A stretch of 64,000 nucleotides of DNA, from NCBI RefSeq assembly GCF_052425735.1, contig NC_135763.1, positions 27,590,001 through 27,654,000 of the forward strand, in the 5' to 3' direction. The position numbers and the translations under genes are program-made. This DNA is from Oculina patagonica. Taxonomy: Eukaryota. Position 1 is the stretch's first letter. Each line of letters starts with the position of its first letter. The notes under the pieces were generated by a model. That model ran no database searches, had not been told where the DNA came from, and saw only the letters and a list, made by a program, of their open reading frames with translations. Of the stretch, positions 1 through 63,566 are shown piece by piece.

Positions 1-2994
1 TTTCTCTTTCCAACCTTCACGGTTAACACACCTGAAACCCTTATTAGTAAACCCTACTTGACAAACGGTATGTCTAAATATACCACAGCATGGGTTACTG
101 TGGCAAGGATTCTGAAATTAAGAGGAACAGTTTTTAATAGTTAGAAATAGACATAACTTTGTACATTTAATAGGTCTTGAAATGTCCTGAAATGTCCATA
201 ATGACCCATTTTCTACTTAAGATTATATGTCAATATTATCTTCATGAAGAAGCAATTCCAAGATCAAGATCACATTATTTTTTAAGTTTTTAAACACACG
301 CTTTATTATGTTTAGATGTATTGTAATACCGATATAGCAGAAATAACAATTATGGATGAGTTATGTTTTGGCTTACCTCAATATAAAACTAGCATAATAC
401 TATCACTTGTAATTTTGGAATTGCTTATCTTATAAGAGAAAATGATTTAGGACCATAAGTGTAATCGAAAGCTTAAAAAAGCATTGGAGAATGAAAAAGA
501 AATACCCTTACAAAATAATTTTACCTCAACACCATAGTAGGTGTAACCTTGTATTTCTTCCATTGATGCACTTTCCTCTGTGGCACTGTTTAATTCACAC
601 AAGCGGTTCCCCTTGTCTTGAGGTCCCAAGTTGACGGACACACAGTTTGGCTCCAAAAAACACTTCAGTCGGCAGCTCCCATCATCGGGTACTATCTTTG
701 ATCTTATCACGTGACCCTTGAGTGCTTTGTTTGATATTGGCTCCTCGAATATTAACATGCGTTCGTATTCGTCCGCGAGAACTGTGAAAAGAAGTGTACT
801 TATTACGCGCGATCCTCTGAAGCTGTTTTATATTTTTTTTTTTTTTTTCCAGGATGAATTTAGCTAGTTAATAAACAAAAATATGAAATCTTGGGAAGTT
901 AAAACAAAAAACCTTCGTGTCCGATCACGTGGGCAGCATTCAAGGAGACGTTTGAACCTGGCATAGTAAGTCTCCGTCCCCAGGCGGCATGGGCTCTTCG
1001 CTTTCTCTCTGACTTTTCTTTGTTTATAATCCCCCCCCCCCCACCCGCTATTTCAACGGCAATTTCGACCTTTTCTCGCGTCAGCTACTGTCCCTGATCA
1101 TGACGACCTGTGTCTCCAAGGATGTGTTTATCGTGTCTATTATTTCTGAGTACTATTGAATTGCTAGCGACGCTTCTTTACCGCAGTTAAATAAATGGAA
1201 TGAAACAGATTTCTCAGTTTAGACCGGGTTGTGTTTAGTTTCCACTAAGTGAAACTTAGTTTCATTTTCCACATCAGCTGTTTTTTTTTTTTATTTTTTG
1301 AATTCTGAATATTGGTATGGAGATCAACGGTATACACGGATTATACTAATAAGGGTTGAACTACTAATAAGGGTTCAATAGGCCTAGGGTTGAATAAATG
1401 GAAAAAAACTGAATATCTTTTGTATCGGGTTTTGTTAAGTTTCCATTGAAAGTGGCATTTTTCACAGCAGCTGTAATTATATCGGTCTTGAATCCGAAAT
1501 ACTGGTATTGTGTTTGCTGACAACATAAATTAATTACTGATAATTAGATAAATGAATAAGTAATGATATTTTACTGGGCTTTTTGGTTTCGTTTTTTTCA
1601 ATTTTCCACAACTCTTCTTTGATTTTTTTGGGGTCTCGGGGGGGAAAGGGTTAATTTTTATTTTGGAAATTTTATCCTTGCAAAAATTTTTAGAGATTTC
1701 CCCCACATGAAAAAGTGTGAAAAAAAAGAAAAAAAAAAAATAAAAAGAGACCGTGGCTGTAACCATCTTCAATAAAGCCCGAAATTTCTATTGGGATGTA
1801 AATGAAATACAACTCCTTTTCTCTTTTTTCTAAACGAAAATTTCCGGGGGGGACGGAACTTTTAAAAGGGGTTTCTTTTTTTTATTGTTTGGGGTGAAGG
1901 AAATAATTCGTGTTTCACTGTTACATTTTGTACCTTTTGTGTCAAATCGCCTTTCAGCCCTTCAGTATGGCCATGCAAAATTTCGCATTTCAACAGAAGT
2001 AGCAGGTTCTTCGGAAAACTTAAAATGGAACACTTTCTTTTGGAACGGAAATTTCCATACGAAATTTTTGATTTTGTTTTGTTTTGTTTAGTTTTTTTTT
2101 TTTCTATAAATGCAACAACCCCCATTTTTCTTGGCTTTAGCCGCTGATAGGAAGAGAGAGACCGAAGGACTTAAATTTATTCTTGAAGATCTGACGGGTT
2201 GTTCTGTAATTAGCCTTTCCAACTTACCGGCGCAATTTAAAATACACCTTATGTGAGTGAATTGCTTCAGTTTCATCTCATTTTTTCCTCTAAAGGTATT
2301 TTCCAGTTTAGACATGATCTTATTCGGAAGGTGGATTCTAAGATCTGAATATAAAACTTGAATAAACGCCTGGCTTTTTTATAACTGAAGCACTCATGGA
2401 AGTTTTCTGTTGTTAGCCGTCGCACCAGTCAGACGATTAAAACGGTTTTCTTTCGTGTTTACTGGTGCTATTTTTTGCTCCGACGAAGGGGAGATTACAA
2501 AAAGCTGATTGAAAACGTTAGGTTTGGTCAGGGAAAAACTGCGTTTCTTTACATACAGTTTGAACTACTGATATTAGGGACGGACCATTATTTTTTTGGG
2601 GGGGGGGGGAAAAATTTTTTAAAAATATTTTTTGGGGGGGTGGAAAAANNNNNNNNNNNNNNNNNNNNNNNNNNNNNNNNNNNNNNNNNNNNNNNNNNNN
2701 NNNNNNNNNNNNNNNNNNNNNNNNNNNNNNNNNNNNNNNNNNNNNNNNNNNNNNNNNNNNNNNNNNNNNNNNNNNNNNNNNNNNNNNNNNNNNNNNNNNN
2801 TAATTTGATCTTTGCAAGCGGTGCCAAACGTGGCAAATTTTATTTCTTATGTAGGAAATTGTTATCTTTTTGTTATTCGTAGCTGAATGCTGAACAAAAG
2901 ATATCAAATAATAGTAAATCTTACCAGTATAAACCAGTGAGCCCGATCCGAATATAATCCACACGAGCAATACGAAGACTTTGTTGAAGGCCAT
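1..2994 (-). CDS. Locus A (3'-partial): secreted PAN/apple (class I)-EGF protein, continues off the left edge
   Basis: Exons 2925-2994 (MAFNKVFVLLVWIIFGSGSLVYT signal peptide, phase 1, GTAAG donor), 525-781 (PAN: SCRLKCFLEPNCVSVN...LCELN, phase 1 to 0) and <1-111 (EGF: NPCHSNPCCGIFRHTVCQVGFTNKGFRCVNREGWKEK). Canonical AG/GT sites, frames join. Intron 1 spans an N-gap. Confidence 0.8.
2649..2800. other. Assembly gap (152 N)
   Basis: Run of N. The ~1.8 kb to the left is rich in long homopolymers, suggesting low consensus quality. Confidence 0.98.
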
Positions 2995-5108
2995 TCTTCT
3001 TCTGTTGACTTTGCAGTTGTTCACCCGTTCATTACTTTAAAATATTCGTAAATAATTCAGTAGATAAATTCGATATTTTCACACCTACTTGTCTTGGTGT
3101 GATTTTTCTTTTTTTATTTTAGACAAAACCTACAATTTTAAAGGTATTCGTATCAAACAGTTCTTGACACCTTGCAACACTTTGTACCTTTTGTTGCCAT
3201 TTTCATTATCACCTAAGCTTGTGATCAGCATTTCAATTTTTTTGTCTTCGTAAGCTTCCTATGTGCATTTATATACCTCTTATTAATCGAGTTCGAGGTT
3301 TCTGTAGGCCGGATATGGATCGAATTTTTGCCTGTCAACTGATTTATGATCCTACTGGACGGATTTAGGAAACCAGGTTAATAAGATATTAAAAAAGGTC
3401 AAAGGCGCTGAAAGCGTCTTTATTTGACTAACGTGCGTCATTTAAATGAAACAAAAGGCGAGTGAGTTTTATTGGTTTTCGAAATCAGTTTGGTAGTTGA
3501 CTTGATTGATAGAGACGTTACTCCAAGCTTTAAACGGTTTCTTTTTTAAGACTTTTTGTTAGAGTTGATTTTCGGTAAACTTACGGCTCAGATTACATTA
3601 AAATTACTTCCGAATTTCGTTAAACAGACAAGAACAACTCAGATGAGATGAAAGCACCACGATCAACTTATAGAAAGAACATGTTTGTCAACCTTTCGAA
3701 ACTTACAAATACGACGATTTTCCATCTAGGTAAAAGTATAAATTACATGAAGTCATTTCATTCTATGAGAACCAGGATTACTTCAGTCGCCAAGATTGAA
3801 CGAAGGTAAATACGAAGTAAGGAGAGTGAGCGAACAAAATTGTGAATGAATAAAACTTTCAAGTTGTGGAAAATGTAAAAATACTACGTAAGTAGAAACA
3901 ACGCTCTTAAAAAGGCATTGCCAAGTTCCAACTGAAACGAGCCCCCAAGGTACAACCTTTCATGTGGAAGTGTGTTTTACTTTAAAAATCTCATTACCAT
4001 ATGAAACATTGTGCACTATGACTCGTTTTTACCACAGAGGTAATAGCTGACATCTAGAAAATAGCTTATTCATTTCTGTCAACTGCTTTGGTTTAATATG
4101 GTATGGGGTCGTCATAGTTAACGATCCTAGTCGACAGGGATCCTCCGGTATTGCAAGTCGAGGTTTATACGGTCGTGAGACGCCATAACTCATAACATTT
4201 TTTAATGTTGTTTTATAAGCCATATCATTACACAGCTTGCACATTTTCAGCACTATTCACCAAATACAATAACATGCGGAATATGCAGTTTTTTAACAAT
4301 GTTTATTTATTAGGCTATACCGCATTTTAAGCAACGTGAATTAAGATAAGTATACAGACAAACTGTAAATGCCCTTGACTGCATTTCGCCCGTATTATCT
4401 GAAGGAAAGTGCTTCGTTATATAAGTGCGTACACTTTTTACGTATCATAGCACGATTCAGCTTGTTTTTTATTATTATTTTATATAACAAAATGTATCAG
4501 TACGCCTGCTCTCGCGTCATGCTTTTAACAAAGTCACAAGTTATCCTATAAATGTGTCTATAAAATTACATCAAGAAAGCTTTAAAGTTTTGAACTCTTT
4601 TCCCACTACTGGAAAAATAAGGCAAAAGGAGAACTTTGAAGCAAGGTGACAGTTTTTTTCGTGCTTCTAACTTTTTACTGCCACTAACTTGCTTCTCAGT
4701 GAATGATCGATCCGGATTTTTTTTTTTTTTTAATCGATCCGACGATTGTGAAGAAGGCGCGAGTCTTTTGACCAGTACAGTAGACTGAAACACAAACCAG
4801 ATCAGCCCCCTGTATCCTCCTATGCTCCCGATTACTTCAAACATCTAATATATTGACATTTCAATAAAAGTGGTGTCATAAACGCCAAGGATTCTAGTTT
4901 AGTTTAGTCTATTCTTTCTTTCTTTCTTCTTTTTTTTGTTTACAGTTGGCATATATGTGTGTTTTATAAATAAGTACGTCACAGTAATAAGTTTTCAACT
5001 GAGGAAAGACAAATTCGATATATAACAACGGAGCGCACACATATTAACTACTAAATGATATGTCACCTTTCGACGGCTACCTCAAAGGTTTTCTTTTACT
5101 GAGGGATA

Positions 5109-6174: not shown

Positions 6175-9100
6175 TTAGGGATATATCTTTTCGCAAATAT
6201 ACCCAAGTGCAAAATTACAGTTTAAATCATTCCACTTTCCATCAAAATTTTTTAAGGTGTAGCCTCCAACTGAAATATTTCCCATCGTTATATGACCACA
6301 ATTTTGATTACCACCATAGTTGTTGGGATTACCATTTGACCAATTGTTGTAGATTTCCAGTGGCGTACCATCCGTCCATTTCCACTTGCCTTCGTCTATC
6401 TGGTCGTTCAGTCCAATCCAGAACGACAGCCCAGATGACGTGAGAAAGGTTCTCTTAAGGAAGTTGTTCTCAGCTGCCGATTCTATCTTTACCAGCTGTG
6501 CGCCAAGGCATTTACAACTATCGCTTGCATTGTTCCACGTCTCAGGTGCAGTGAACAGCATGTAACTGGAGCCCGAAAGTGACTCTATTCCGGGAACGGG
6601 ATCTAAGGTAAGAATAATTATGAATCGTTTATCACACCTGTTATGTACACAATTTTTAAACACTTTGCTGTAGTAATGGCGAAAAACCAATAAAAAAATA
6701 TTGCTTAAAAAAAATGCTTTTGCACAATAAGATACAGAAATGTGTCAACTCCTTTCAGTATAAGTAAAATTAAAACTGCTTGTAGACACAACACTAACAT
6801 TGCATTACATAATATAACATTGTATTTCATTGTATTTTTTAGTTGCTTAAAAAGTGTGCAATTTTAAAACACTTCCGACATTAAGTCAGATTACGTTAAG
6901 CACACCTTGCAATCATGCAAAAACAACTAAAAGTAAGATAATATAAGATAAGATAAGAAATTTTATTTAAGTGTCAAAACCTTATAGCCTGGAAAATAAT
7001 ACCATACTAATTAGGGGACACTGCTAAAAACTAAAAGCTACACTAATACTAAGTGGAACGTCTGTGTGGTTTAACATAATAAACTTTTACTCTTTGTACC
7101 TCGACAACCATACACTTCCACCCTCATTGAAATGTAAAAATGCTGAGCTGTAGGACGAAAACGAATGTAGCGTGCACTGATTGGTGGATTTAGTTCATGA
7201 TATACAACAGTGTACTTGTTTTTGTTTCCAGCAAATTCCTTGAAAAAAGTAAGACGGCAAACTGTTAGAAATTAATAATAATTAATTAATAATATCATTA
7301 TCTTCTCAGACTAAAATATGCGTTATTCTGAACCTTCAGAACTTGAGACACTTTACAAAAGAGTGCCCAATCGAAAATCTTTTTCAATGGAGAAGGGATT
7401 TTTCAATGTTTCAAAACCCTTCCACGAAATGGTGACTATTTCTTCCAAGACATGTATCTCAAGTTGTACATAGCTTGACTGTTTAAATTGCGAAAATTGA
7501 GACATTTTTCTGTAGCCGCATAGCTTGCTTGGTTCAGAACAAAATTTCAACAATTTCAAAAGTTAAAATGCTTGAAAAAAGACATGAGTTTCCAGGCGAA
7601 AATCTGAGTAACTAAATTTAACAGTATTTTTATAATAATTTGATATTCGTGCTACCTTATCTGACGTTTGGCCTGGTTCCCTGTAGTACTCAAAGCTTGT
7701 TCCATCATCGCTGTACTGCAGCTTATACTTAGTCACCCACCTGTTGTAAAAAGTGTGATTTCTTCCTTGTGTTGCTACACCGGTCACCCGGGTATAATTG
7801 CTTATAAGATCAACCTGGAGCCATTTGTCTTTGTCACTTCTGGCAGGTGACCAAGCTCCTTGGAGGCGAAGCCTTCCCCGATGAGCGGCATAGCTTGTGC
7901 TATGTTTCGAAGATGCACTTATTTGTCCATTGGATATTTCATGGTTTTCCATGCCGAGCGCCTTGTGATAATCTGAAGATACGAGGAATTAATAGCAGAA
8001 AAAGAAGTGTGACTTCAAATAAAACCTCATACCCTCTGATTTTTAATCGCATTTTGGCAGCGCTGTGTATTCAATTGATTCAACAGGCCATTTTCAAGTT
8101 CCCCTTTGCCTCTGTTTCAAAAAGAGCCTACGTGCAAAACAATTCTTATGAACATGAATTTCACCTACAGGTCTAATTTCCTGCAAATCAAACTCATTTT
8201 CATTTGAATGGTTTCGCACTTAGCCGGACTTGTTTTGAAACAGAGCCAAAGGGGAACTCGGAAATGACCTTGAAGGATCCCTAGTCACTCACGCCTTGAA
8301 ATCCCTGAAAATTGCCATTTTTGATGGCATCGAAATTGCGACGTTGTACGGTAAAGCAAAATTTGATTGCATCGCGGCAAGTTGTGTTACTGGAAGTCTG
8401 TTAAATAACCTTTAGCGGTTTCATAGCAATCTCTTTCGTTTAGGCACGCTACGCGTGAAATAGAGCATCGGAAATCCGGTATGTCAACATATTAAACAAA
8501 AGCGTGGCCAACTAGGGTCTTTCATTGCGCCATTTTCGAATTCCCTTTGCCTCTGTTTTAAAACTTTAATAGTCTTGGTGCTACTAGCATGTGTACAGCC
8601 GTCCCGGCCGCTCCCCTCAAAACAAAAAATCGGTGAGGGAATGTGTGTCTTTTGGCGACGTTAATTGTGTTCCAGTATCCTGCTGTTATCGATTTAAATT
8701 TCATAATTATTATTATAATTATTATAATTATAATTATTTTATAATTATTATATCGGATATCCGGATGACCGAATTTGAATCATGCGGTTCCAAATATAAC
8801 ACATCGAGCTCAAGAAAAAAAGCGCTAGATCAACAAAATGCAAGAAGCAGAACGTTTACAGCACAAAATTCTAATAACCAACCTTCTTCGTTCTCCAAGT
8901 AAAGCTACAAAAGTTTTCGGCAAAGCCAGACACTGTCATTCGTAGCGGCCGGGCCCGGAATCCCAATTATTAAATCCAAGAAGTCATTCGCCTTTACAAA
9001 TAAATTTTAAAGCTTGTCATTTCAAACCAAACATTTTAGATGGAAATGAGCCAAAACAAACCGTACCGCACTAACGAGAGATGTGGCAAATTTAAGGTTT

Positions 9101-12100
9101 CAAACAACAGCGCAGACATTTTGGAGACCACGCGTACGGTCTTCACCAAACTACGGCTCTTTCCACCCTGTCCTGGTTTAAATAATACTGCATATCATTT
9201 ATTATTGTGCCCTTCAGAAACAAGTGAGACGCAAAAGGCTGTAAAGTTCGAATGCTCGCCGCACGCTGAAATAATTTGGAACGCCACAAGCTATCGCCCG
9301 CATAAATTAAAGGCAATTATAAATGTTTTTTTTTTTGTGTGTGTGTGTTAGGGCCAATCAGATCATTTTCCACACATTCCAGGAAAACCACCCGCCGCGG
9401 AACACGATTAACGTCGCCAAAACACAGACATTCTCTCCCCGATTTTTTGAGGGGAGCGGGGCGGCTGTACACAGGCTATGGTGCTACTTATGTCATGAAA
9501 ATGTGTTTAACTCACAACATCGTTTTGATTCAAATCAAACACATTTTTAACTAAATGGTTTGTTGGGCATCAGGGAAATGCCGTACTGACTTGTCTTTCA
9601 ATACCTTTCTCGCACTGGTTCTTTTTGTACTCCTGGTGGCAAACGCATCTAAATCCTTTGTCGGTGAATCCTACTTGACAGACCTCATATTTACTAGGAC
9701 AAGTGTTACAGTGGCAGGGATTCTGAATTTAAAAAAACAAATATGAAAATCTGTGTAAGCAATAGGCAATACAGTTTAAACAGAGTTTCTATTTTCATTT
9801 TTACCTGTGATTATTTTTAAGGTAATTATAAACAGGAGAAATCTCTTCCATCACTAACCCTCAACCCTCAACCACCCCCCCCCCCCCCCCCCCCCCACCT
9901 CCCCTCCTCCCCTACATTTGGTTCCGGAAACAGCGATAAATTAGTAAGTCATCATTGCCATTTGTAGTATAAACAAAATAGTTTTACCTCAACGCCGTAG
10001 TAGGTGTAACGTTGTCTTTCCACCAAGCCAGAAAGAGATGGACTTTCATCGGTGGCATTGTTTAGCTCACACACGTGATCCCCCTCACCTGTGGGCCCCA
10101 CGTTGATTGACATACAGTTCGGCTCCAGATAACACTTCACACGACAGCTCCCATCATCGGGCACTTTCTCGGTTCTTATCACGTGACCCTCGAGTGCTCT
10201 GTTTGATACTGGTTCCTTCAATATTAAGATGCGGTCGTATTCTTCTGTGACCACTGTGAGAAACGATAAGCACATGATGACTGACCCAGATTAAACAATG
10301 CGATTTTTAATCCAAATGTCACTCCAGACAAAGCCAAAGTAAAGGCAAAATTAGATTCTGTTATACATCACAATCGACAAAACAAAATAATTAAGCCAGC
10401 TCACACAAGAAGCAAAGTGTACTTCAAGAGCACTTCAAAATGTGTTGCCATGATATCTGTGCGACAGGCTGAAGCACACAAAAAGGGGCGTATATCAAGA
10501 GACTATTTTCCAGGTGGGGAGGGGCATGGCAAAAATTATCATCAACGAGTGCCTACTGTGTAATGTCGCGTCGATAACAATATCGCGCTCTCCCGCCTCC
10601 CCTCTCCCCCCCCCCCCCGGCATGGCAAAAATTATCATCATCAACGAGGGCCCTACTGTGTAACGGTAGCGTCGATAAAAATATTGCGCTCTCCCCCCGG
10701 GGGGATGACGCATTTTTGCGTGTGGTTCAACCGGCTATGCATAGCAAGAGAACCAATGGTCGCACTTTGGAGGATTTTTCTACACTTCAACACAACACTC
10801 AGCACCCGAAGGTCAACAAAGGTTAAGAAAAAATGTTTTAAAGCGGTCATTTTTTGAAAGTTCAATACGCGGTATGCTGGAAGGAGGACTGAAATCGAAA
10901 TATTATGGTGTGTGATATGGCATAGAAAAATTCAAAAATTCTGGGGACATTCGATTCGGCGCAGAAATTGATATAGTGATAAGTACCAAACTCTAATACT
11001 AACGAAGTTTTTTCGGTTCCAGACCTCGCACAAGCCGACCGCGTATAAATCTTTCGGGTGCAGCCTTTCTACCACCAAACCGGGTTTTTATAATTCAAAC
11101 TGTAGCCACAAAAAAAAGCCGCTTCAAGTTAATAAACAGGCAACTATAAACTTCCATTCTTCCTCCAATTTAATGTAATGTAACTTTGTCATGTGCCGGT
11201 CGAAAGTGCCGAATTTTTGCCTTGAATTAAATTGTGTTAAAGTATGTTACTTGAAAATGTATTTTCACCAGCGGCACTATAACAAATTTACTTGTTACGC
11301 GTGGTTCTCGCTATTGTACATGTCTAATGATTTTTTTTTTTTTTAGAAAACGTTTTCTGGACTATGTAGATAAGGATATATGGGGCTTCTGTTGAAAACG
11401 CTAACTTAACTTTGAAATGATATATAGAAAATCGTAGAGCACAACCTCTTAGAGATCCATGACCTGGTGAAATACCCCAAAGGCTCGCTTGTTAAGTAAA
11501 CATATAGCGTGTGTTTGGACTATTGAACGCAGCAGGTGGACGAAACTTTCAATTGACGTATTTAATTTCACTTACACTATTCCGCTGTTATTGGCGAACA
11601 AAACCATGCCGATATTTCCTTTTATTCAAGTTAGTGACTCGAAAAAAGAAGTTGAACTTATTTTCAGTGAAAATTTGAGAAGACGTAAAGTCACTGAGTT
11701 GAGAAATTCAATTTCATATGCCGTCCTGTTGAGTTGAATGTATTAGTTATTAAAATAATGTTTATCCCAGCGTAAGAAAATTTCGGAACGAGATTATCAT
11801 TGCAACTAACGGTTATTTTTGTTTTATTTTATTTTGTTTGTAGTGTTAAGTGGTATTTGACTGATCTGGAGACCCTTTATAGCCCAGTCCCGGTTAGTAA
11901 AAAGTATATGAAAATTGCCATTTCGTTTGAATCGCTATTAGTTCTTGGAAAAATGCACGACATTTCCCAACTAATATGGTTTCAAAATGGACATTGGCGA
12001 AAGATCGTGGCATTATATTTTCTTCAGAACCCAGTTATGCATTTTGAATTTTGTATCTTATTGGGAAAAATATGATTTCGGAAGCCTGAACATGATTTAC

Positions 12101-13008
12101 GAAAATTCTCCGTTTAGTTCACTGTTATACATAGGCTTCTTTAGTTTCCAATATCAGCATGTAATTTTTTATATATAAAAATGCAAGCTTTTGCTGCAAT
12201 CGTAACTTCAGGGTTGTTTTGTCCTTTTAAAAGGCACCGGTGCTCAGTTTGTGAAATACATAACTTATTCATTATTGTCATACATGTTTTCTAGGGCTTT
12301 ATCAAAGAAGCCTGTTTTCCCTCAGAAAGAACAAAAAAGAGTAAGGGACTGAAAATATATCATAGGCGTTTTTAACGCTCGTATATTGAAATGAACTAAG
12401 TTTGTTAAGTAAAACACAACCCGAATTCGAAGGCGTTTCAAAAAAAAAGGAAAACAAGGAGATTGTGTCTATTTTCAGCTGCGAATATAAATTAATTAAT
12501 CACAAGATAATTGTGGTTTGCCTTTGCCATTGACGTTGTTTTTGCAAAATAACAGGCTTTCGTTGCGTTATCTCCTGCTCTTCTTTATTTTAAATCGGCG
12601 ACTTCTTTATCTTTAAAGGCGGTTTCAATATCAACCATGAATATTTTGAAAACGTTTAAATATGTGTCTCGCTTGAGTTTCCCTGTTCTCTTCAAACATC
12701 CTTCTTTGTTTTCTTTTCTTGATAAAACTCGAATATTCACCTTTAATCAGTTATGGTGAATCTAGATTTTTCTACATTAACATTTTGTGCAGTAATTTCA
12801 GCCTTCTTAATTAATATTTCGTTCTTAGTAGCAAATTCAAATGTCCAGTTTACTTATTGAGAAATTACCAACTTTATGCTTTTTCCGCGTTTCTATTTCA
12901 TTATTAGCCATAATGTATTACAGTAAATTACGAATAAACCTTACCAGCACACACCAGTAGACAGAAAGGGAATGAAATCCACACGAAGAAGACTCTGAAG
13001 AGGCCCAT
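6175..13008 (-). CDS. Locus B: secreted PAN(I)-EGF-F5/8C(discoidin)-C-type lectin protein, 443 aa, apparently intact
   Basis: Exons 12945-13008 (MGLFRVFFVWISFPFCLLVCA), 9988-10253 (PAN), 9605-9722 (EGF NPCHCNTCPSKYEVCQVGFTDKGFRCVCHQEYKKNQCEK), 7656-7972 and 7100-7238 (F5/8C: LGMEN..ISASS..WLQVDL..TGVATQG..ARYIRFRP..SMRVEVYGC), 6175-6602 (CTLD: WIGL, NPN, WND). Total 1332 nt = 444 codons, all GT-AG, no internal stop. Confidence 0.88.
8085..8270. mobile_element. Short (~180 bp) MITE; related copies at ~42789-42960 and, degenerate, at ~3880-4070
   Basis: AGGCCATTTTCAAGTTCCC ... GGGAACTCGGAAATGACCT inverted ends; shares the ACTCATTTTC..AATGGTTT..GCAC core with the 42.8 kb copy. Confidence 0.6.
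8585..9478. mobile_element. Non-autonomous DNA transposon with ~95 bp TIRs and 9-bp TSD (AcademH- or MULE-like), in intron 3 of locus B
   Basis: TAGCATGTGTACAGCCG...GGCGACGTTAATTGTGTTCC / GGAACACGATTAACGTCGCC...CGGCTGTACACAGGCTA; TSD TGGTGCTAC at 8576-8584 and 9479-9487. Confidence 0.8.
10523..10697 (+). repeat. Tandem ~75-95 bp direct duplication, probably subterminal repeats of a DNA transposon
   Basis: GGCATGGCAAAAATTATCATCAACGAG...GCGTCGATAA...GCGCTCTCCC occurs at ~10523 and ~10619. Confidence 0.55.
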
Positions 13009-24481: not shown

Positions 24482-24571
24482 TTAAAGATGCCAAGCCTTG
24501 GAAGGCTTCGGCACACAATCAAATACTAATGTTGGCCTCACATATTCAAGAAACAATACCCCTTGCATTAT

Positions 24572-24720
24572 ACGTAGGGAGAAATCTCGCAAATATATCC
24601 AAGTGAACAAGTGAAGAATCACACCAGAAATCATTCCACTCTCCTTTATAACCAATAAAGGTATAACCTCCCATCTGAAAGGATTCCTTCACTATATGGC
24701 CACAATTTTGATAAACAACG
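24572..24720 (-). pseudogene. Degenerate copy of the CTLD 3' third, downstream of locus D
   Basis: Translates VVYQNCGHIVKESFQMGGYTFIGYKGEWNDFWCDSSL, then an 8-nt duplication shifts the frame. Confidence 0.8.
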
Positions 24721-27136: not shown

Positions 27137-27749
27137 TATATAACTGTTCTATGCTTGGAATCGTTTTCTTACCAAAACGTGTCGGTAGATGTAACCTTGT
27201 TTGTCCACAAAATTGCTGCTGGAGGCTTGCAAATGGGTGCGATTGTTTAAATCACACGATGGTGTATCGCTATCTATTGGGCCGTAGTTGTAAGACACGC
27301 GGTTGGAGTCTTGATAGCAGCGTAACTCACATGTTATTTGGCTATGAACTTTCATGCTTCTAATCATGTGTTTTTCGAGAAACTTGTCCTTTGTTTCTGG
27401 TTTGAATTGAATGGTTCTGCAGTCATCTGAAAAAGCTATAGTTTTTGACACACAAATATTATTATCATTGAGTGTCTAAGTAAATTTGAGCAGCTGTTGA
27501 AAAATATCATTGATGTCTGCACAGTAAATGTATTGTTTGAATGTACAATATTGATTAAAACACAAATTACCAAAATACATAAACACATAAACACAGAGTC
27601 AAAAATTTACGATATTCCAAAGTGTTTTGTTCGTTTTTGGAAGATTTTCAAACATTAATGAACAGCAACCGCAAATTCGTGTTCGTAGTCATTTATCAAC
27701 GAGATTCGTAATTTATAGCCACAGTTTCCGAGTTCGATATTTGTTTTTT

Positions 27750-35398: not shown

Positions 35399-35449
35399 CA
35401 AGTGCATTATACACTTACTTATACTATAAACGATACCCTGACCTTTCAC

Positions 35450-39001: not shown

Positions 39002-39033
<32 letters not shown>

Positions 39034-44336: not shown

Positions 44337-44448
44337 AACCCCCCATTACGTTCCTTGAGGATATTATATCGAGGCCTGTTATTGAAATTTATGATTAAAT
44401 ACATTCATACACTCACTTTTGCTAGAAACGATACCCCTGACCTTTAAC

Positions 44449-47400
44449 TTAAGGCGAAACCTTCTCGCAAATATATCCCAGTGCCAAATCGCATTCTAAA
44501 TCATTCCACTCCCCAGTAAAATTGTTAAAGTTATAGCCTCCCAGCAGAAAAGATCCCTTTGCTATATGGCCACAATTTTGATAACCGCCCGAGTTGTTGG
44601 GATTGCCATCTCTCCAGTTGTTGTAGTTTGTCAGTAAGCTGCCATCTGTCCACATCCACTTGCCTTCCTCCACCTGGTCACTCAGTCCGATCCAGTAAGT
44701 CACTGCAGATGCCGTGAAGAATGTAGCCATCAAGAAATCGTGCTCCTCTGCTGACTCGATCTTTATCAGTTCTGCTCCAAGACTCTTACACTTTGCTGCT
44801 GCGTTGTTCCAGGTCTCAGGCTCAGTGAATAACTTGTAACATGAACCAACAAGTGACCCTGTTCCTGGAATGTAGCCTTAAGAAGATATCAAAATTAATT
44901 TGTTTCTTTCATCATCTCAAATGCTGTCATTAGACGCCACATTGATATAAAAGCGGGCTTTCAATAGGCCTAATACTATTTGACATTTATTCACGAATAT
45001 TGTTTCTTTATTTTTGTCTTGTTTTTTTTTTTCTTTTGTGTCAAGGGATACCAAACAAAAAAGGAACGTACCTAATTCACAGACACATCGGTAGCCTTTC
45101 GTTGTGAACCCAGCTTGACAGGTTAATGGACATGGGCTACTGTCGCAGGAATTCTAAGAAATACCATCGATAGAAACAATGAACATAAACTCGTAATAAC
45201 AAAAAATCATCATCCAAGCCAAAAAAAAAGCAAAATACATAAACAAGACGTTATTCAGTATTTGTGGAGAGTATTAAAAGTTACATTACTGGCATTAAAT
45301 TTTCAATTGCAATGCCTAACATGCAACATAACTGGAAAATTAACTAATTAATTTTAAACCAAACGAGAAGGAAACCAAATTAACCAAAAGGACGAACTGC
45401 AACAAGCTTTGACATTCTCAAGAAAAAAATAGTAAGCCATTACACAATCAACATTTAATAAAAATTCATGAAAGAAGAGACAATAAAATATCATACGATT
45501 AGCGTTACAATTAGCCAGAGTTAACATAAAGCAAAAAATAGGTTTTAGTGTAATGGTTTTATCCTTGGGATAAAATACTTAAGTACGGACGGACAATCAA
45601 GTGCCCAGATATTATTAGGTGTGGGGCTCCAGTAGCTCGCGGGAAATATGCTATTGCAGATAACTATTGCGTAAAAAAGGTCAAATATGAGAAATGCTAC
45701 AGAACATTAATAGACAATCTTCTATTTTCAGGTCTGTGCGGTATTCCGTAGCCGAGTTATCCTTCCAAATCTTCCACACAAATTTATAGAGCTCAGTGAC
45801 GTGTGTGAATGCCATGAAACATCTGAAATTCATTGCTGCTACAAAAAGCGATCAGTTTGCCCTCAGGATCTAGTAAAACATTCACATAAACACTTCTTGT
45901 AATACCTCAACCGTTCAGATTGCTTAAAATCACAGGTTAAGTCAATTTTTTAAACATGCGTGACAGCCTTCCGGCGGTCATCTTGATGTCGTGTGGCGTG
46001 AAATTGAAATGCTCTACTTTAAAGACGAAGGGCGCTATCAAGCTGAAATCCTTTAACAAGATATACATTTATCACGTCCAACAGCTAATGAAAGATGAAA
46101 ACCCAGGACCTTGCGTTTTTGGATTTGAGAATTTTTAAGGCGTAACGTGAAAATAAAGAATAACCAGAATAGTTGCCAAGTTAAAATGGCATGGGCGACT
46201 GTAGTGAAAAAAATTGTAGCAGATCAGGCAAAAATAAGTATTATACCTTTTTTCATTTCTTTTGGTATTGACAAAATCTGGTCATTGTACGTTAAGTCTC
46301 CAATTGTGTATTGCTTGATGAATAACATATTGTTGCCATTGGGAGATTTTGTATTTAAATTTCTTAGGAATTCCTGAATTAATGTTAAGTATTTCACGTC
46401 ATAAATACGGTGAAAGAGTAACAAACAAACTTTACTTTTAATGTCAACACGATTATTGATTATTATTCTACGCTTGGAATTGGTTACTTACCAAAACGTG
46501 TCGGTAGGTGTAACCTTGTTTGGGCACAAAATCGCTGCTGGAGATTTGCAAATGGGTGCGATTGTTTAAATCACACGATGGCATATCGCTGACTATTGGG
46601 CCGTAGTTGTAGGACACGCAGTTGGGTTCCCGGTAGCAGCGTAATTCGCATGTTATTTGGCTCTTAACTTTCATACTTCTGATCATGTGATTTTCGAGAA
46701 ACTTGTCCTTTGTTTCCGGTTGGAAATGAATGGTTCTGCAGTCATCTGAAAGAGCTAGTTTTGACACACAAATGTTAACATTGGGCTTATTAATAAACTA
46801 ACTCTGTTATCCTTGAGTGTCTAAATCTGAGCAGCTGTTGAAAAATACCATTGATGTCTGTGCAGTAAATATTTTGTTTGAATGTACATTTTTAATAAAA
46901 ACTCAAATTACCCAAATACATGTGTACAGCGTTTTCCTGCACCACTTTTTTACGATATTCGAAAGACTTTTGATCGTTTTTCAAGGATTTTCAAAGATAA
47001 ATAAACAGCAACCAAAATTAAACTCCGTGTTCGTAGATATTTATCAATGAGATTCATTATTTATAGCCATAGTTTTCGAGTTTCATCTTTCTTATTCTGT
47101 TGTACATTTTTTATTTAAGCCAATATGCAAATGTTTTATCACATTTAGGAGATTCGTCATAATACACAGAGTCCACTGTCGAGTTTTTTTTAAATCAAAA
47201 AAGGTGAATAATGAATGCATTTAACTCAATGCATTTTCACTCAACCGGCTTTATATATGTAAAAGGAACGTCGAATTCAAGCCTAAGGTACTACTGAAGG
47301 CGTGGAAAATAGAGCAATTACAGTAATTTTTACGATCAATTTGTTGAAAGACTTTATTAAATATTTTAGTATTCTTTTTAAATAGTTTTGAGCAAAATAA

Positions 47401-47702
47401 ACAAAATGAAGATAGAATAAATTGATAACATATCGGGAAATTAAGATTGGGATAGCGATAACTTTGAAAAACAAATTTAAAAATCGGCAACTTGTTACAT
47501 ATCGGTAAAGGGTGATGAAATTAACACTGAATTTGTCGCTTTCTTCACCTGGTAAAAGCATTAAAGTTTGTAACTACACACGGAGTGTTTTCTCGTGTAA
47601 TGAATTATATTCCGAAAAATGGGAAAATGTGGCATAGTTTTACCTACCTGCATTCGCTGTAGCAATCAAGAGAATCACGACATATGGTTTTAACTTTGGC
47701 AT
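44449..47702 (-). CDS. Locus F: secreted PAN(II)-short EGF-C-type lectin, 272 aa, apparently intact
   Basis: Exons 47648-47702 (MPKLKPYVVILLIATANA), 46492-46745 (PAN II), 45072-45153 (NSCDSSPCPLTCQAGFTTKGYRCVCEL), 44449-44876 (CTLD GYIPGTGSLVGSCY...NPN...WND). Total 819 nt, in frame, GT-AG. Confidence 0.88.
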
Positions 47703-56359: not shown

Positions 56360-57785
56360 CTATTCTGCTCTCTGAACTTTCATACTTCTGATCAAGTGAT
56401 TTTCCAGAAACTTGCCCCTTGTTTCGGGTAGGAATTGAATGGTTCTGCATTCATCTGAAAGAGCTGGTTTTGACAGAAAAGGTATTAACATCGGTTTGTT
56501 GCTAAACTAACTCCGATATTGTCGAGTGTGTATATATTTGAGCAACTTTCAGCAAAAATTACCTTCGAGGTCTCTGCACTCAACGTTTTTTTCATTGCAG
56601 ACTTGCTAAAAATTCAAATTACCCAAACGTTTATACACAGTGTCCACACCCCTTTTTTTCCTACATCAGACACTCTCAGAGATCTTTAACATTAAAAAAC
56701 AGCAAAGTTCATGTTTACAACCAGGAATCAACAAGGACCATAACTTGTGGCCTTAGTTTTGCGAGCTCCATCTTTTTTATTCTATTTTTCCGTTGTGGGT
56801 ACCCATTTTCCCCCGAAAAAAACTCTACTATTCGCTGAGCAATTATTATTTGAAATTTTCATAAAGGCTTATATGCAATTTTATTACGATTATAAGACTC
56901 GACATTACGCACAGTAAACCAATTTGTTTTTTGTTTTGTTTTGTTTTTCTAACAAATTTAAAAGGTGAATAATGAATGAAGTTTTCTCAATGGGCGTCAA
57001 ATCAAATGTCAAAGAAACGTCCAAAAATTAATAAGCTACTTAAAAGTCCAAGCCCCGTAAGCGGACACCCTCACGGAAGCGAATCAAATGTCGTCCGTAA
57101 CTAAAGGTGTCTGCTTACGGGATTGATCATCGTAAGCAGCAACTAGTATAAGAGGATAGATGGTCGTTTATAAGAGCTCACACCGCTCACATTTAACGTC
57201 GTTAATGCAGGACAAAAAAGTATCGCCCTATTCAATGATTGTATGAACATGTAAGAGTTTTCTATGCGGTGTCCGCTTATGGGTGCTTCAAAAAAATAGG
57301 TTAAATCGTTCCCCTCCAAAATACCTGCCTTCGCTTACGGAAATGTGAAGATTCAGAGTTTGAAAGGGAGTTTAAACGGGGTTTTGTCCAGGTGGTCGTA
57401 AGTACATCTTTCTGCCTACGACAGTGAGAGGGTCTGTTAAGAGGGCTTCCACTGTTGTACCGTTGAAGTGAACGAATAATCGGATAATAAAAAAAAGTTC
57501 TTCGTTTTTACTGAAAGAAAATTAGCTGGAAACAAATCGATAACTTTTAAGGGTAAAAAATCGTCAGCTCGTTTCATACCAGTAAGCTGTGATAAAATTA
57601 ACAATTTGTTGCTTTCTGCACGACATGGAAAGTGTTAAAGATTGTAACTAAACGCTCGTGTTTTTTTTTTAGAGTAGTTGATTATAATCAAAAATTAAAA
57701 AACGTAAAATCGTGGCATAATTTCACTTACCTGCATTCACCGTAGCAATCAAGAGAAACAGCACATATGTCTTTAACTTTGACAT
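56360..57785 (-). pseudogene. Locus G: remnant class II gene (intact leader plus truncated PAN; EGF and CTLD exons absent)
   Basis: Exon 57731-57785 MSKLKTYVLFLLIATVNA (GTAAGT donor); exon from 56454 DECRTIQFLPETRGKFLENHLIRSMKVQRAE*. No EGF or CTLD exon seen before the intergenic block at ~55.3 kb. Confidence 0.8.
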
Positions 57786-60143: not shown

Positions 60144-63100
60144 TTAAGGAGAAAACTTCTCACAAATATACCCAAGTGAGTAATCACATTTGAAATCATT
60201 CCACTCGCCATCAATATAACCATCAAAGTAATAGCTTCCCATCCGAAAAGACCCCTTCACTATATGACCACAATTCTGATTACCACTCAGGTCGTTAGGA
60301 TTATTACGTCCCCAGTTGGCGTAGTTTGCCAGTAAGCTGCCATTTGTCCACATCCACTTGCCTTCCTCATCCTGGTCACTCAGTCCGATCCAGTACGTCA
60401 CTGTAGATGCCGTGAGGAAGGTCCTTGTCAGGAAGTCGTTCTCCTCTGCTGATTCGATCTTTACCAGTTCTGCTCCAAGGCTCTTGCACTTTGCTGCTGC
60501 GTTGTTCCAGGTCTCTTTTGGCTCAGTGATTAACTTGTAACATGAACCACAAACAAGGGACCCTCTGCCGGGAATGAAGTCTAAAGGAAGAAAGAAGACG
60601 TCACATCTTCGTCACCTTATCTCAACACTTTGGTTGAATAACTTTTTCAGAGTATTTTTTTCGTAATGTGACTTTAAGAGTGAAAAAGGAAACACATTTT
60701 AATTTTTCTAAAAGAATAAAAAATACCTTCATTACACTGCTCCCCTCTATACCCATCACGGCAGTCGCATCTAAAGCCTTTGTCAGTGAACCCAACTTGG
60801 CATATAGCGTACTTCCCAGGACAAGGGTTGCCATGACAAAAATTCTAAATTAAAACAAAACAGAGAAAAAGATATTTCAAATAAGGCTATGGACCCCTTT
60901 TCCTAAAGTTTTAATTTTTTTTTTCACAACCATGCTATGGCATCAGTTTTTAACAAAATTTAAAGCATTGTCACTCCGGACTGGCAAGTCTTTAGAGGGA
61001 TATATAACATGTCTCATCACATTTCGAAAGTGATTTCTAAATTTCAACTTGAAAATATATAGCGTCTTGGTAAATTTACGTTTTGGAGATAGTTAGAATT
61101 CAACGTTTAGTTTTATGTCGTCGTCGTTGTTGCTGTTGTTGTCTCAGATACCATTTTTCGTTTTGCAGTTCAAGATATCGTGTATGCCCGTTGCTGCCGT
61201 TTGCCTACTACACTTGCTTCCAAGCGGCAAAGTTTGGGTTCATGCATGAAAAGATAGCCCGAAATCATATCAAGAGATACAAACTCAACCCCAGCTGATC
61301 ATACCTCAACAGCATGGTAAGTGTAACGCTGTCTCTCCACCAAGCCAAGGTGAGATGGACTTTCATCCGAGTCATCGTTCAACTCACAAATCTGCGTTAT
61401 TTCGTCAAATGGTCCCACGTTGATGGATTTACAATTTGGATCCAAATAGCACTTCACTCGGCAGCTCCCATAATCGGGCACTATTTCGGTTCTTATCACA
61501 TGACCTTCGAGTGCTTTGTCTGATACCGGTTCCTTAAACATTAAGACGCGGTCGTATTCCGCCGTGAGCACTGTAGAAAAAAATGTGTATATATGGTATC
61601 ACATTCTGTTAAAGTTTTTTAATTTTCTAACTTTTCACGTTTTGGAGTAGTTAGTAAGCAATATAAAATCTACTCAAACGTCTCTTTTAATCAATAAAGC
61701 CAACTACATGCTTGCTTTGCTAAACCGGTTATGATTCGCTTCTCTTCTGTCTTGTCTAGATCGTATCTCTTGTGCCTTAGGTGGCCAGAGTCGCAATGCC
61801 CGCTGACCACGCCAACCGAAATCTGCACCGGATCACAGAACATGAGTGACGATCGTTAAGCACGAGAGACTGGACCCGAGGCGACCACACTCGGGGTGCA
61901 CCTGAAACTGCCATCGAGGGATCGAGCACGATGATGGTGGGCGAAGTGTAGAGGCCACAAAGACCGCTATTAGAGTGCTAACGGTCAAAAATATGTTCTT
62001 GACATTGTAGTTGCATGGCAACGAATTGACGTTACAGTGACTCAATATGTTATAGTAAAACTACAAGGATGTAAAGTATACTAAAACAGGTGAGCAGCAG
62101 AATGCAAAGAGGGAATTCTAAACTATCACGAGCCACCTTAAGTAGGACGGTCTCTTCTTACAGTTGCCACCCAACGCAGCTTTGGCTTCAATAAAATGGA
62201 ATTCGATCATTTTCGTTTATTCCCAACCATTGGGTTTATAACGGGAAAACTAGGAACATCCTTTTAGAGCGTATAATTAAATGTTAAAGCAGTTTTAAAA
62301 GTTTCAAATTTCGATATTTGGTAGCCAAAAATGATAATCTAATGTCCTTCAAGTAATCTTTTAAGTGCTATCCTCTAAAAAAAGTGAATTAACGTGGCTC
62401 TAGCAAAGACGATTATTCTCGATATTTGCATCAGCCGAAAAATAAATAACTGAAAGCGTTTCTTAAATGTTGATTGTATTCCTTATATTTTAACCACGCA
62501 TAACGCATATGCAAAGGAAGGTTAACATTATCTAGCACCATCTGTATTATATTTACGACAACATTAACGACTGGCTTACCCAGATGTATATAAAGCCTCC
62601 TTGTGGTGTACGGAGCAAAAATGGTACTTTTGTTAAAAACATGCAGTCCCAAGTGTAAGTAAAGTAGGCAAAAATAATTTTCAATGACAATTGGCCAAAA
62701 GAAAGAACAAGAAGAAACGTTGGTTTGCTGCCTACTCCAAAATTTTCGACGTGCTAAAGAACAAAGAACAACGACAAAGCAACTACGGGTGTTTTCTTTG
62801 ATATCATTGTTTTATCACCCATAGCTTTGTTATGCACTACTTTCGAGAATAAATTTATAAATTCTCGGTTCGTTCATGTTTACATAGTTTATTATCATTT
62901 TTCAAGTTAAAATGGCTTAGCAATTTGAAATTAGTCAGTATCGTTTTTATCGTCGTCTATAAAACACATTTGTCGGTACGCAAACGATCTCGAATTTGAT
63001 CAGCTGGTGCTGTTAAGTTTATAATTCATAATTAATTAGCTTCTTTGCAGAATAAAATATTACCCTTTTTTACAAAAAAGATAACTTATCATACATGTAC

Positions 63101-63566
63101 GAAATAAAATGTCTGAATATTATCACAATTTATCCAGTATTTGACTTAAATCAATACCATTTGTTGACAAGTGCTCAGTTTAACGTCTAAAACAAGGCAT
63201 GTGATATAACATTTAATTGCATTGGTAAGTAATTAAAACTTTTTTTGAAAAGCTTCCCTAATTTTACCTGTTCAGAAATTGTAAAAAACGGTTACACTTG
63301 TTTAAGTTAGCTCGCATTATTGGTTTTTAGCGAGCCCGAGTTTTCTTTAGTGAAATTTATTAATCTATTAATCTAAAGCTTTTCAAAACCAAGTCGTAAA
63401 TATGTGTTTATTGGGTGTCTAATTTAATATTTTCGGCTATGAACAACATTGTAAATTTTCTTAACTTGAGTGTGTCAAATTAAGATCATAACTTACCACG
63501 ATACCCCAGGAAACTCAACCCTAGAGTTATCCAAGCGGGAAATGTTAACGCCTTGAAAAGGGCCAT
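60144..63566 (-). CDS. Locus H: secreted PAN(I)-EGF-C-type lectin, 296 aa, apparently intact
   Basis: Exons 63497-63566 (MALFKALTFPAWITLGLSFLGYR, homologous to the locus A leader), 61305-61570 (PAN I), 60727-60844 (NFCHGNPCPGKYAICQVGFTDKGFRCDCRDGYRGEQCNE), 60144-60580 (CTLD DFIPGRGSLVCGSCY...NPN...WND). Total 891 nt, in frame. Confidence 0.88.

What the first reader, a model, noticed from the sequence alone, without database searches (positions are those of the whole stretch)
1..63566. Phase-compatible, mix-and-match array of secreted PAN-EGF-(discoidin)-C-type lectin genes: candidate diversified recognition system
Seen: eight co-oriented loci share one phase scheme (leader ends in phase 1, PAN 1-0, EGF 0-1, F5/8C 1-0-1, CTLD 1-stop), so modules can replace their counterparts in frame. 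Modules come in types: three leaders (MAF/MAL 70 nt, MGLF 64 nt, MPK/MSK 55 nt), PAN I or II, 118-nt or 82-nt EGF, and at least two CTLD C-terminal types. The combinations are not congruent: B=MGLF+I+long+F5/8C, C=MGLF+II+short, E=MPx+I+long, F=MPx+II+short, H=MAL+I+long. Known: PAN, F5/8C and CTLD domains bind glycans or proteins, and C-type lectins are implicated in cnidarian microbe/symbiont recognition. Inference: a birth-and-death family diversifying by intron-mediated recombination, possibly also by cross-locus splicing.
Basis: partly seen in the sequence, partly recalled or inferred. Interest (0 to 1): 0.82.

Follow-up and report, generated by a model that had tools for sequence, protein, structure and literature searches.

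The report
Coral PAN-EGF-lectin gene array, recombined
This stretch of a stony-coral (Oculina patagonica) chromosome holds a tandem family of genes for small secreted lectin-like proteins whose parts have been swapped between neighbouring copies by ordinary recombination, leaving visible leftover exon pieces; it is a clear case of a known process, not a new kind of system.

Summary
Four are intact: B (443 aa), E (288), F (272) and H (296). C has a 2-bp frameshift, D is a multiply broken pseudogene, G is a leader plus a truncated PAN exon, and A runs off the window. Public RefSeq/GenBank models of Oculina patagonica match my B, E and H models residue for residue.

The mix-and-match pattern is real. 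All four leader-by-PAN and PAN-by-CTLD-tail combinations occur, PAN and CTLD trees disagree (AU p 0.013-0.016), and CTLD exons are mosaics (max-chi2 p 0.0005). Scars remain. E keeps the first ~120 nt of a PAN-II exon upstream of its working PAN-I exon. D, E and F carry a leftover CTLD 3' end behind their stop codon. C has a junction inside intron 1.

This fits unequal crossing-over, gene conversion and illegitimate recombination in a birth-and-death array. It is only partly "intron-mediated".

dN/dS is 0.15-0.42, so there is no sign of hypervariability, and an immune role is unshown. PAN/EGF/CTLD combinations are already catalogued in cnidarians. Other windows of this scan flagged sister PAN-EGF-X arrays in this genome.

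The parts
2925..2994 (-). Locus A leader exon (MAF..., 70 nt, ends in phase 1)
2649..2800 (.). Assembly gap, inside intron 1 of locus A
525..781 (-). Locus A PAN type I exon (257 nt, phase 1-0)
1..111 (-). Locus A long EGF exon, cut by the window start. The gene continues outside with F5/8C exons and a canonical CTLD
12945..13008 (-). Locus B leader exon (MGLF..., 64 nt)
   Evidence: identical to RefSeq model P0080
9988..10253 (-). Locus B PAN type I exon (266 nt)
9605..9722 (-). Locus B long EGF exon (118 nt)
7656..7972 (-). Locus B F5/8C exon 1 (317 nt, phase 1-0)
7100..7238 (-). Locus B F5/8C exon 2 (139 nt, phase 0-1)
6175..6602 (-). Locus B CTLD exon (428 nt including the stop)
20114..20177 (-). 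Locus C leader exon (MGLF..., 64 nt). It is about 90% identical to B's leader over the exon plus 100 nt flanks, and B-like (74-92%) across roughly 21180-19861, which also takes in the promoter region and the first 237 nt of intron 1
19839..19877 (-). Recombination junction inside intron 1 of C. It is B-like upstream and like type-II/MPx genes downstream
19236..19489 (-). Locus C PAN type II exon (254 nt; RefSeq uses the acceptor 9 nt upstream)
18265..18346 (-). Locus C short EGF exon (82 nt, five cysteines only)
17640..18072 (-). Locus C CTLD exon with a 2-bp insertion (frameshift). Its 5' part is F-like and its 3' part is H-like
31601..31662 (-). Locus D degenerate leader (in-frame stop)
27744..31483 (.). 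Inverted pair of a 97.6-99.3% identical repeat inserted in intron 1 of D
27173..27426 (-). Locus D PAN type II exon (a conserved Cys replaced by Arg)
25439..25520 (-). Locus D short EGF exon
24836..25267 (-). Locus D CTLD exon (4-nt insertion, frameshift)
24549..24773 (-). Relic of a CTLD 3' end (C/H-like) downstream of D's CTLD
40944..40998 (-). Locus E leader exon (MPML..., 55 nt; F/G-like)
   Evidence: RefSeq model P0079
39878..40005 (-). Relic of the 5' part of a PAN type II exon in E's intron 1. It keeps its acceptor, has an in-frame TAA, and is 91% identical to F
   Evidence: also present in the second assembly (L011)
39528..39793 (-). Locus E PAN type I exon (H-like, 86%)
37958..38075 (-). 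Locus E long EGF exon (96% identical to H's; dS 0.05)
35450..35877 (-). Locus E CTLD exon. It is H-like at the 5' end and F-like at the 3' end (max-chi2 25.7, p 0.0005)
35250..35399 (-). Relic CTLD 3' end downstream of E
47648..47702 (-). Locus F leader exon (MPKL..., 55 nt)
46492..46745 (-). Locus F PAN type II exon
45072..45153 (-). Locus F short EGF exon
44449..44876 (-). Locus F CTLD exon
   Evidence: GenBank/RefSeq model P0081
44196..44288 (-). Relic CTLD 3' end downstream of F
57731..57785 (-). Locus G leader exon (MSKL..., intact, consensus donor)
56370..56506 (-). Locus G truncated PAN type II exon (first ~85-135 nt only). No further exons follow
   Evidence: same structure in L012
63497..63566 (-). 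Locus H leader exon (MALF..., 70 nt)
61305..61570 (-). Locus H PAN type I exon
60727..60844 (-). Locus H long EGF exon
60144..60580 (-). Locus H CTLD exon (437 nt)
   Evidence: model identical to P0016

Best explanation
The window is part of a cluster of roughly 700 kb on one Oculina patagonica chromosome. The cluster encodes small secreted proteins built as signal peptide, PAN/apple, EGF, optional discoidin (F5/8C), and C-type lectin-like domain.

Two gene lineages are interleaved here. Type I has PAN I, a long EGF, usually F5/8C, and a CTLD. Type II has PAN II, a truncated EGF, and a CTLD.

The array grew by tandem duplication. Its members then exchanged segments by unequal crossing-over, gene conversion and occasional illegitimate recombination.
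- C is a B-type promoter and leader joined, inside intron 1, to a type-II body whose CTLD 3' part is H-like.
- E is a type-II promoter, leader and first ~120 nt of PAN II, joined to an H-like PAN I plus EGF cassette, with a CTLD that switches back to F-like.

The domain blocks sit between phase-1 introns, which is the classical rule for shuffled extracellular modules. Chimeras therefore stay in frame, and some (E) remain intact genes while others decay (C, D, G).

Shown: the gene models, the mosaic structure, the junctions and relics, and purifying selection.

Inferred: the proteins are soluble extracellular binding proteins (lectin or adhesion type), with the variable hairpin of the CTLD and the PAN domain as the likely ligand-contacting parts.
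For: Gene models:
- My B, E and H models equal XP_078374690, XP_078372762 and XP_078374438/KAL9970566.
- Domains are confirmed by Pfam, by an AF2 model with mean pLDDT 76, and by CTLD TM-scores of 0.82-0.88 to CD23, SRCL and mannose-receptor CRD4.

Mosaicism:
- Sliding-window best hits map the mosaic.
- The intron-1 junction of C is located.
- The relic PAN-II exon in E is seen. The same junction is 98-100% identical in an independent assembly.
- Relic CTLD ends are seen.
- The PAN tree splits I from II at 100/100 and pairs E+H at 94/96. The CTLD tree pairs C+H at 87/96 and D+F at 99/98, and rejects the PAN-congruent clades at AU p 0.013 and 0.016.
- Max-chi2 for E against H and F is 25.7, p 0.0005.
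- Between E and H, dS is 0.05 in EGF, 0.52 in PAN and 0.39 in CTLD.

Family context:
- Neighbouring loci carry PAN I-EGF-F5/8C-CTLD and PAN II-EGF-CTLD.
- Pocillopora has a 296-aa PAN I-EGF-CTLD orthologue on ~1.4-kb intron-free contigs.

Selection: dN/dS is 0.15-0.42.
Against: - No reads could be laid, so transcription and splicing rest on annotation models. The only other hint is an indirect word-share signal: runs of one study hold 0.39-0.54 of E's CTLD exon words against 0.15-0.18 of the whole locus, and whether those runs are RNA is only a guess.
- The order and direction of the exchanges cannot be rooted with so few copies.
- AU p-values are moderate. The {C,D,F} clade alone is not rejected (p 0.085).
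- The ligand, and even calcium binding, are unknown. The canonical EPN...E...WND site reads NPN...Q...WND.
Confidence: 0.8

Rival explanations
1. The array is an actively exchanging cassette system. Frequent non-allelic gene conversion between members keeps generating new CTLD and PAN alleles in the population, so individuals differ in their recognition repertoire, as in MHC/KIR-like or snail FREP-like diversification.
For: - In a second assembly, the E-type locus is 98-100% identical through the relic and PAN I. From about nt 100 of the CTLD exon it becomes 94-95% F-like and only 86-87% E-like.
- Divergence between the two assemblies is very uneven: H-G 96-99%, F 88.6%, B-A 80-85%.
- The E-H EGF tract has dS 0.05.
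- Variation peaks in the CTLD hairpin next to the putative binding site.
Against: - It is fragmented, so chimeric contigs or paralogue-versus-orthologue confusion could produce the same picture.
- dN/dS is below 0.45 everywhere.
- Most paralogue pairs have dS 0.2-1.0, which points to old events.
- The variant CTLD in L011 is itself frameshifted.
Confidence: 0.12
2. Combinatorial diversity is made at the RNA level. Leaders or PAN-EGF heads of one locus are spliced to the CTLD or F5/8C exons of a neighbouring co-oriented locus (read-through or cross-locus splicing), or the phase 1-1 F5/8C pair is an optional cassette.
For: - All loci are co-oriented and phase-compatible.
- G keeps an intact leader with a consensus donor 10 kb upstream of F, but has no body of its own.
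- The public F model lacks a leader.
Against: - No transcript evidence exists for this. RefSeq models of B, E and H each use only exons of their own locus.
- The DNA itself carries the chimeras, which is enough to explain the incongruent combinations.
Confidence: 0.05
3. The mosaics are assembly artefacts caused by collapsing or mis-joining 80-95% similar tandem paralogues.
For: Tandem paralogues are a known source of mis-assembly, and there is one gap in the window.
Against: - E's relic/PAN-I junction and the H-G structure are reproduced in independent contigs L011 and L012.
- The junctions are embedded in kilobases of diverged unique sequence.
- Chimeric E has an intact ORF and matching public gene models.
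Confidence: 0.03

Closest known systems
Cnidarian C-type lectin domain proteins with EGF, PAN and F5/8C partners, as catalogued in surveys of cnidarian pattern-recognition receptors (PMC8260672)
   Same: They are secreted CTLD proteins. That survey found EGF to be the commonest CTLD partner in anthozoans, listed PAN among common partners, and listed F5/8C among the extracellular partners. Repertoires are large and lineage-specific.
   Different: The survey counts architectures only. It gives no locus structure, no recombination map and no relic exons. This subfamily has NPN...QNC...WND in place of the EPN...ENC...WND calcium/sugar site.
Classical exon shuffling of phase 1-1 extracellular modules (Patthy's rule; from general knowledge)
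   Same: The PAN+EGF block, the F5/8C pair and the CTLD are each bounded by phase-1 introns, so any combination stays in frame.
   Different: Here most exchanges are between homologous paralogues in one array, by unequal crossover or conversion, rather than by insertion of a foreign module. Two of the mapped breakpoints lie in exons.
Expanded, tandemly arrayed invertebrate lectin families evolving by birth and death, e.g. the bivalve C-type lectin expansions (PMC10140915)
   Same: Tandem copies, pseudogenes, variable domain architecture, and a presumed recognition role.
   Different: The PAN-EGF head is specific to this cnidarian superfamily. In O. patagonica the same head is also joined to fibrinogen-like, LamG-like and other tails (earlier notes of this scan).
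Mannose-receptor family, CD23 and DC-SIGN carbohydrate-recognition domains (closest solved structures)
   Same: The CTLD fold and four core cysteines, plus the WIGL and WND motifs.
   Different: Both acidic calcium ligands of site 2 are amides here (N and Q). A longer, variable beta-hairpin precedes WND. The proteins have no transmembrane part.

Membership tests
C-type lectin-like domain (CTLD) superfamily | Sequence match to Lectin_C above the curated threshold | tested here: met
   PF00059 scores 75-90 bits against a cut-off of 22.6 for B, C and H
C-type lectin-like domain (CTLD) superfamily | CTLD fold | tested here: met
   In the AF2 model of H the CTLD region has pLDDT 71-96. Foldseek TM (target-normalised) is 0.82-0.88 to CD23, SRCL and MMR CRD4
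Calcium-dependent carbohydrate-binding C-type lectins (CRD sensu stricto) | EPN or QPD motif plus a downstream Glu and WND at calcium site 2 | tested here: not met
   The alignment shows NPN(N/D)...(N/Y)QNC...WND in all intact FIPG-type copies. The spacing equals the canonical EPN...E-N-C (canonical pattern from my own knowledge), but both Glu positions are Asn/Gln. Sugar binding is therefore not assured
PAN/Apple domain | Match to PAN_1 above the curated threshold, with conserved cysteines | tested here: met
   PF00024 scores 24.4-26.1 bits against a cut-off of 21.4 for both types. There are 4 Cys in type I and 5 in type II
EGF-like domain | Six cysteines in the C-x4-C-x6-C-x9-C-x-C-x8-C pattern; Pfam match | tested here: inconclusive
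   The long form has the six-Cys pattern, but Pfam hits fall below the cut-offs. The short form stops after Cys5
F5/8 type C (discoidin) domain | Match to PF00754 above the threshold | tested here: met
   B's exon 2 alone scores 32.6 bits against 28.2. The whole B protein carries a precomputed PF00754 hit. The N-terminal Cys of the usual disulfide is Tyr in B
Birth-and-death tandem multigene family | Tandem paralogues with pseudogenes and fragments, and copy or content differences between genomes | tested here: met
   4 intact genes, 2 pseudogenes and 1 fragment. Correspondence with a second assembly is uneven, though its species is unknown
Hyperdiversified immune recognition families (FREP, 185/333, VCBP-like) | Excess of non-synonymous change or hypervariable regions | tested here: not met
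   Pairwise dN/dS is 0.15-0.42. The highest 30-codon window is 0.41
Hyperdiversified immune recognition families (FREP, 185/333, VCBP-like) | Induction by microbes or symbionts; somatic or individual-level diversification | not testable with these tools

The most novel reading that the evidence does not exclude
The array behaves as a germline cassette-exchange system. Ongoing non-allelic gene conversion between PAN and CTLD exons of neighbouring copies, made safe by the shared phase scheme, continually creates new combinations and alleles. Coral individuals would then carry different repertoires of secreted recognition proteins.
Probability: 0.12. Interest if true: 0.7.

Novelty: new member of a known kind. 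Interest (0 to 1): 0.4.

Why it matters
The locus is a compact, well-preserved record of how modular extracellular proteins are rebuilt. The donor, the recipient, the breakpoints and the discarded exon pieces are all still readable in one 64-kb stretch.

It also defines an uncharacterised coral family, PAN-EGF-(discoidin)-CTLD, with a conserved non-canonical NPN/Q/WND site. That family is worth testing for ligand specificity.

It does not, on present evidence, reveal a new diversification mechanism or an immune function.

Tried and rejected
**Read laying.** Those places were not sent to any search tool afterwards. Splicing, expression level and cross-locus joints therefore remain untested.

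**Run searches.** They returned only runs whose RNA nature is a guess. The exon-over-locus enrichment is suggestive, not proof.

**Literature.** Searches for the automatic names of the orthologues, for the second assembly's accession, and for PAN+CTLD exon shuffling in corals found nothing specific.

**Positive selection.** Rejected at the resolution available, with dN/dS below 0.45.

**C as a simple F x H recombinant.** The single-breakpoint test was not significant (p 0.125). The pattern shows several short tracts instead.

**F5/8C relics in E and H.** None was seen at protein level in the self-comparison.

**Complex prediction and the large representative search.** Not used, because no binding claim is made.

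Full report
**What is there**

A six-frame self-comparison showed that every repeated coding piece lies on the minus strand. I aligned the paralogous pieces with their flanks and read off conserved AG acceptors and GT donors. I then assembled eight loci, named A to H by rising window coordinate.

- Leaders of 70 nt (A, H), 64 nt (B, C) or 55 nt (E, F, G), all ending in phase 1.
- PAN exons of 266 nt (type I; 257 nt in A) or 254 nt (type II), phase 1-0.
- EGF exons of 118 or 82 nt, phase 0-1.
- Two F5/8C exons of 317 and 139 nt in B, phase 1-0-1.
- A CTLD exon of 428-437 nt running from phase 1 to the stop.

Pfam recognises PAN_1, F5_F8_type_C and Lectin_C above their curated cut-offs. The EGF exon is recognised only by its cysteine pattern.

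The state of the eight loci differs:
- B (443 aa), E (288 aa), F (272 aa) and H (296 aa) are intact.
- C carries a 2-bp insertion that frameshifts the CTLD.
- D has a stop in its leader, a repeat insertion in intron 1, a lost PAN cysteine and a 4-nt insertion in the CTLD.
- G is a leader plus the first part of a PAN-II exon and nothing else.
- A is cut by the window edge.

**The gap**

The N run at 2649-2800 lies in intron 1 of A, 125 nt downstream of the leader's donor site. No frame crosses it. The leader-to-PAN distance (~2.0 kb) matches that of the neighbouring paralogue Z (~2.2 kb). Both flanks are collinear and co-oriented on contig L014 of another assembly. Continuity is likely but not proven. 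I did not infer any letters for the gap.

**Identity of the genome and independent gene models**

Protein searches name the organism as Oculina patagonica. They return public models that equal mine residue for residue:
- H = KAL9970566 / XP_078374438.
- E = XP_078372762, including the MPML leader spliced directly to PAN I.
- B = XP_078374690.

F is annotated without a leader (234 aa). C is annotated as a 174-aa product ending at the frameshift, and D as a fragment. RefSeq's C model and two other PAN-II genes use an acceptor 9 nt upstream of mine, which adds Ala-Leu-Ser. Both choices keep the frame.

A Pocillopora orthologue with the same PAN I-EGF-CTLD build (296 aa, 57% identical to H) sits on ~1.4-kb contigs that can only be spliced RNA. 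So the discoidin-less form is old and expressed in another coral.

**Is the mix-and-match real?**

Yes. All four combinations of leader type and PAN type occur: MGLF+I in B, MGLF+II in C, MPx+I in E, and MPx+II in D, F and G. So do all four combinations of PAN type and CTLD tail type: I+"EKFSP" in H, I+"EKVSP" in E, II+"EKFSP" in C, and II+"EKVSP" in D and F. Types that cannot be aligned with each other cannot converge, so recombination is required.

The tests agree:
- Sliding-window best hits and per-module identities give the map.
- C is B-like from its promoter through the first 237 nt of intron 1 (74-92%; about 90% across the leader exon and its 100-nt flanks). It is then F/D-like through PAN II, the short EGF and the start of the CTLD (up to 96%). 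It is then H-like (80-93%). The 5' junction lies between 19877 and 19839, inside intron 1.
- E is F/D/G-like from 2 kb upstream through the leader and intron 1. It then carries the first ~120 nt of a PAN-II exon, with its acceptor and an in-frame TAA (40005-39878). It becomes H-like about 70 nt before a PAN-I acceptor and stays so through the long EGF (96% identical to H's, dS 0.05). Inside the CTLD exon it drifts from H-like to F-like (max-chi2 25.7, permutation p 0.0005).
- Behind the stop codons of D, E and F lies a leftover CTLD 3' end of the C/H kind.

The trees disagree as expected:
- The PAN tree separates I from II at 100/100 and joins E with H at 94/96.
- The CTLD tree joins C with H (87/96) and D with F (99/98).
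- The AU test rejects the PAN-congruent clades {C,D,F,L004} (p 0.013) and {E,H,B,I} (p 0.016). {C,D,F} alone is not rejected (p 0.085).

**Not an assembly artefact**

Two contigs of a second, fragmented assembly (GCA_044670265.1; organism not named by the tools) reproduce key structures. One reproduces E's relic/PAN-I junction at 98-100%. The other reproduces the H-G structure at 96-99%.

**Context**

The window is G000:C6:27,590,001-27,654,000. PAN exons of both types recur from about 26.95 to 27.66 Mb and on other chromosomes, with more than 600 candidates.

The commonest neighbour architecture is PAN I-long EGF-F5/8C-CTLD. This covers locus A completed outside the window, Z, I, and L007-L009. 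PAN II-EGF-CTLD also recurs (L004, L005).

There are two CTLD kinds. One is an "FIPG" kind (B-H, I, L004). The other is a canonical "CPxTW" kind (A, Z, L007, L008). Each occurs with and without discoidin, counting a Pocillopora protein.

PAN-EGF heads are also joined to fibrinogen-like, LamG-like and cbEGF tails. This agrees with earlier notes of this scan on sister arrays.

**Mechanism**

The simplest account is tandem duplication followed by unequal crossing-over, gene conversion and occasional illegitimate joining. Survival of in-frame products is made easy because the blocks are bounded by phase-1 introns.

"Intron-mediated" fits C's 5' junction only. E's 5' junction is exon-to-intron, and the CTLD exchanges are intra-exonic.

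**Selection and function**

Pairwise dN/dS is 0.15-0.42 in PAN and CTLD. The highest 30-codon window (0.41) covers the segment between the NC and WND motifs. dS between paralogues is mostly 0.2-1.0. This is a conserved, old family with a moderately variable loop, not a hypervariable one.

The AF2 model of H (pLDDT 76) shows that segment as a long beta-hairpin on a standard CTLD (TM 0.82-0.88 to CD23, SRCL and mannose-receptor CRD4).

At calcium site 2 the family reads NPN...QNC...WND. The spacing is canonical, but both glutamates are replaced by amides. This is conserved in Pocillopora and in the consensus of 34 relatives. Calcium-dependent sugar binding is therefore uncertain.

I infer soluble extracellular binding proteins. 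An immune or symbiosis role is not shown.

**Expression**

I worked beside them and sent none of their letters to any search afterwards.

Indirectly, four runs of one study hold 0.39-0.54 of the words of E's CTLD exon but only 0.15-0.18 of the whole E locus. That is what RNA would give, but the runs' kind is only guessed.

**Hints of turnover**

In the second assembly the E-type contig switches, about 100 nt into the CTLD exon, to a sequence that is 94-95% F-like, and that copy is frameshifted. The F-type and B-A-type contigs are only 88.6% and 80-85% identical to the window, against 96-99% for H-G. This could be recent exchange and gene turnover. It could also be paralogy or a chimeric short-read contig. 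I count it as a lead only.

**Verdict**

The intron-only mechanism is partly right. Cross-locus splicing and a diversified immune function are unsupported.

PAN, EGF and F5/8C partners of CTLDs are already catalogued in cnidarians (PMC8260672), and the genes are already in public annotation under generic names. This is a new, nicely documented member of a known kind.

Noticed in passing
window 48747-51984 (+): Remnant of a Ty3/gypsy-type LTR retroelement between F and G. Reverse transcriptase, RNase H and integrase pieces are split over several frames. It explains the 45% G+C block. It is broken and was only observed.
   Followed up: partly
window 27744-29070 and 29610-31483 (inverted pair), 53622-54873: Three copies of an unclassified repeat, 97.6-99.3% identical, with no Pfam hit. 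Two sit as an inverted pair in intron 1 of pseudogene D. The copy at 53.6-54.9 kb is absent from the collinear contig L012 of a second assembly, so it is a recent insertion.
   Followed up: partly
CTLD exons of B, E, F, H (e.g. window 35450-35877): Calcium site 2 reads NPN...QNC...WND instead of EPN...ENC...WND, with identical spacing. This is conserved across paralogues and in Pocillopora. The 17-19 residues before WND form a long, variable beta-hairpin in the model.
   Followed up: partly
window 18265-18346, 25439-25520, 45072-45153: The 82-nt 'short EGF' is an EGF truncated after its fifth cysteine. PAN II has five cysteines and F's CTLD has one extra, so type-II proteins have an odd cysteine count. 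That may mean an inter-domain or inter-chain disulfide.
   Followed up: no
window 19490-19498, 46746-46754: Two in-frame acceptors 9 nt apart precede PAN-II exons. RefSeq models use the upstream one, adding Ala-Leu-Ser.
   Followed up: partly
L011 (GCA_044670265.1 contig), 2700-3400: The E-type locus of a second assembly has an F-like (94-95%), frameshifted CTLD 3' part and a different downstream flank that resembles window 22831-21895. This is either recent exchange or a chimeric contig.
   Followed up: partly
L001 6003-8130 (outside the window, downstream of locus A): Locus A continues with two F5/8C exons and a canonical 'CPxTW' CTLD that appears frameshifted. A's EGF also lacks one cysteine, so A may be decaying.
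   Followed up: partly
window 57731-57785: G's leader exon is intact with a consensus donor, although the locus has no usable body. It lies 10 kb upstream of F on the same strand, and the public F model has no leader.
   Followed up: no
Nothing is implied about them, and they were left alone.
   Followed up: no
P0049/P0100 (Logan transcript contigs of another coral): A relative carries an extra calcium-binding EGF between the EGF and the discoidin domain (PAN I-EGF-cbEGF-F5/8C-CTLD). This is one more in-frame module insertion in the family.
   Followed up: no
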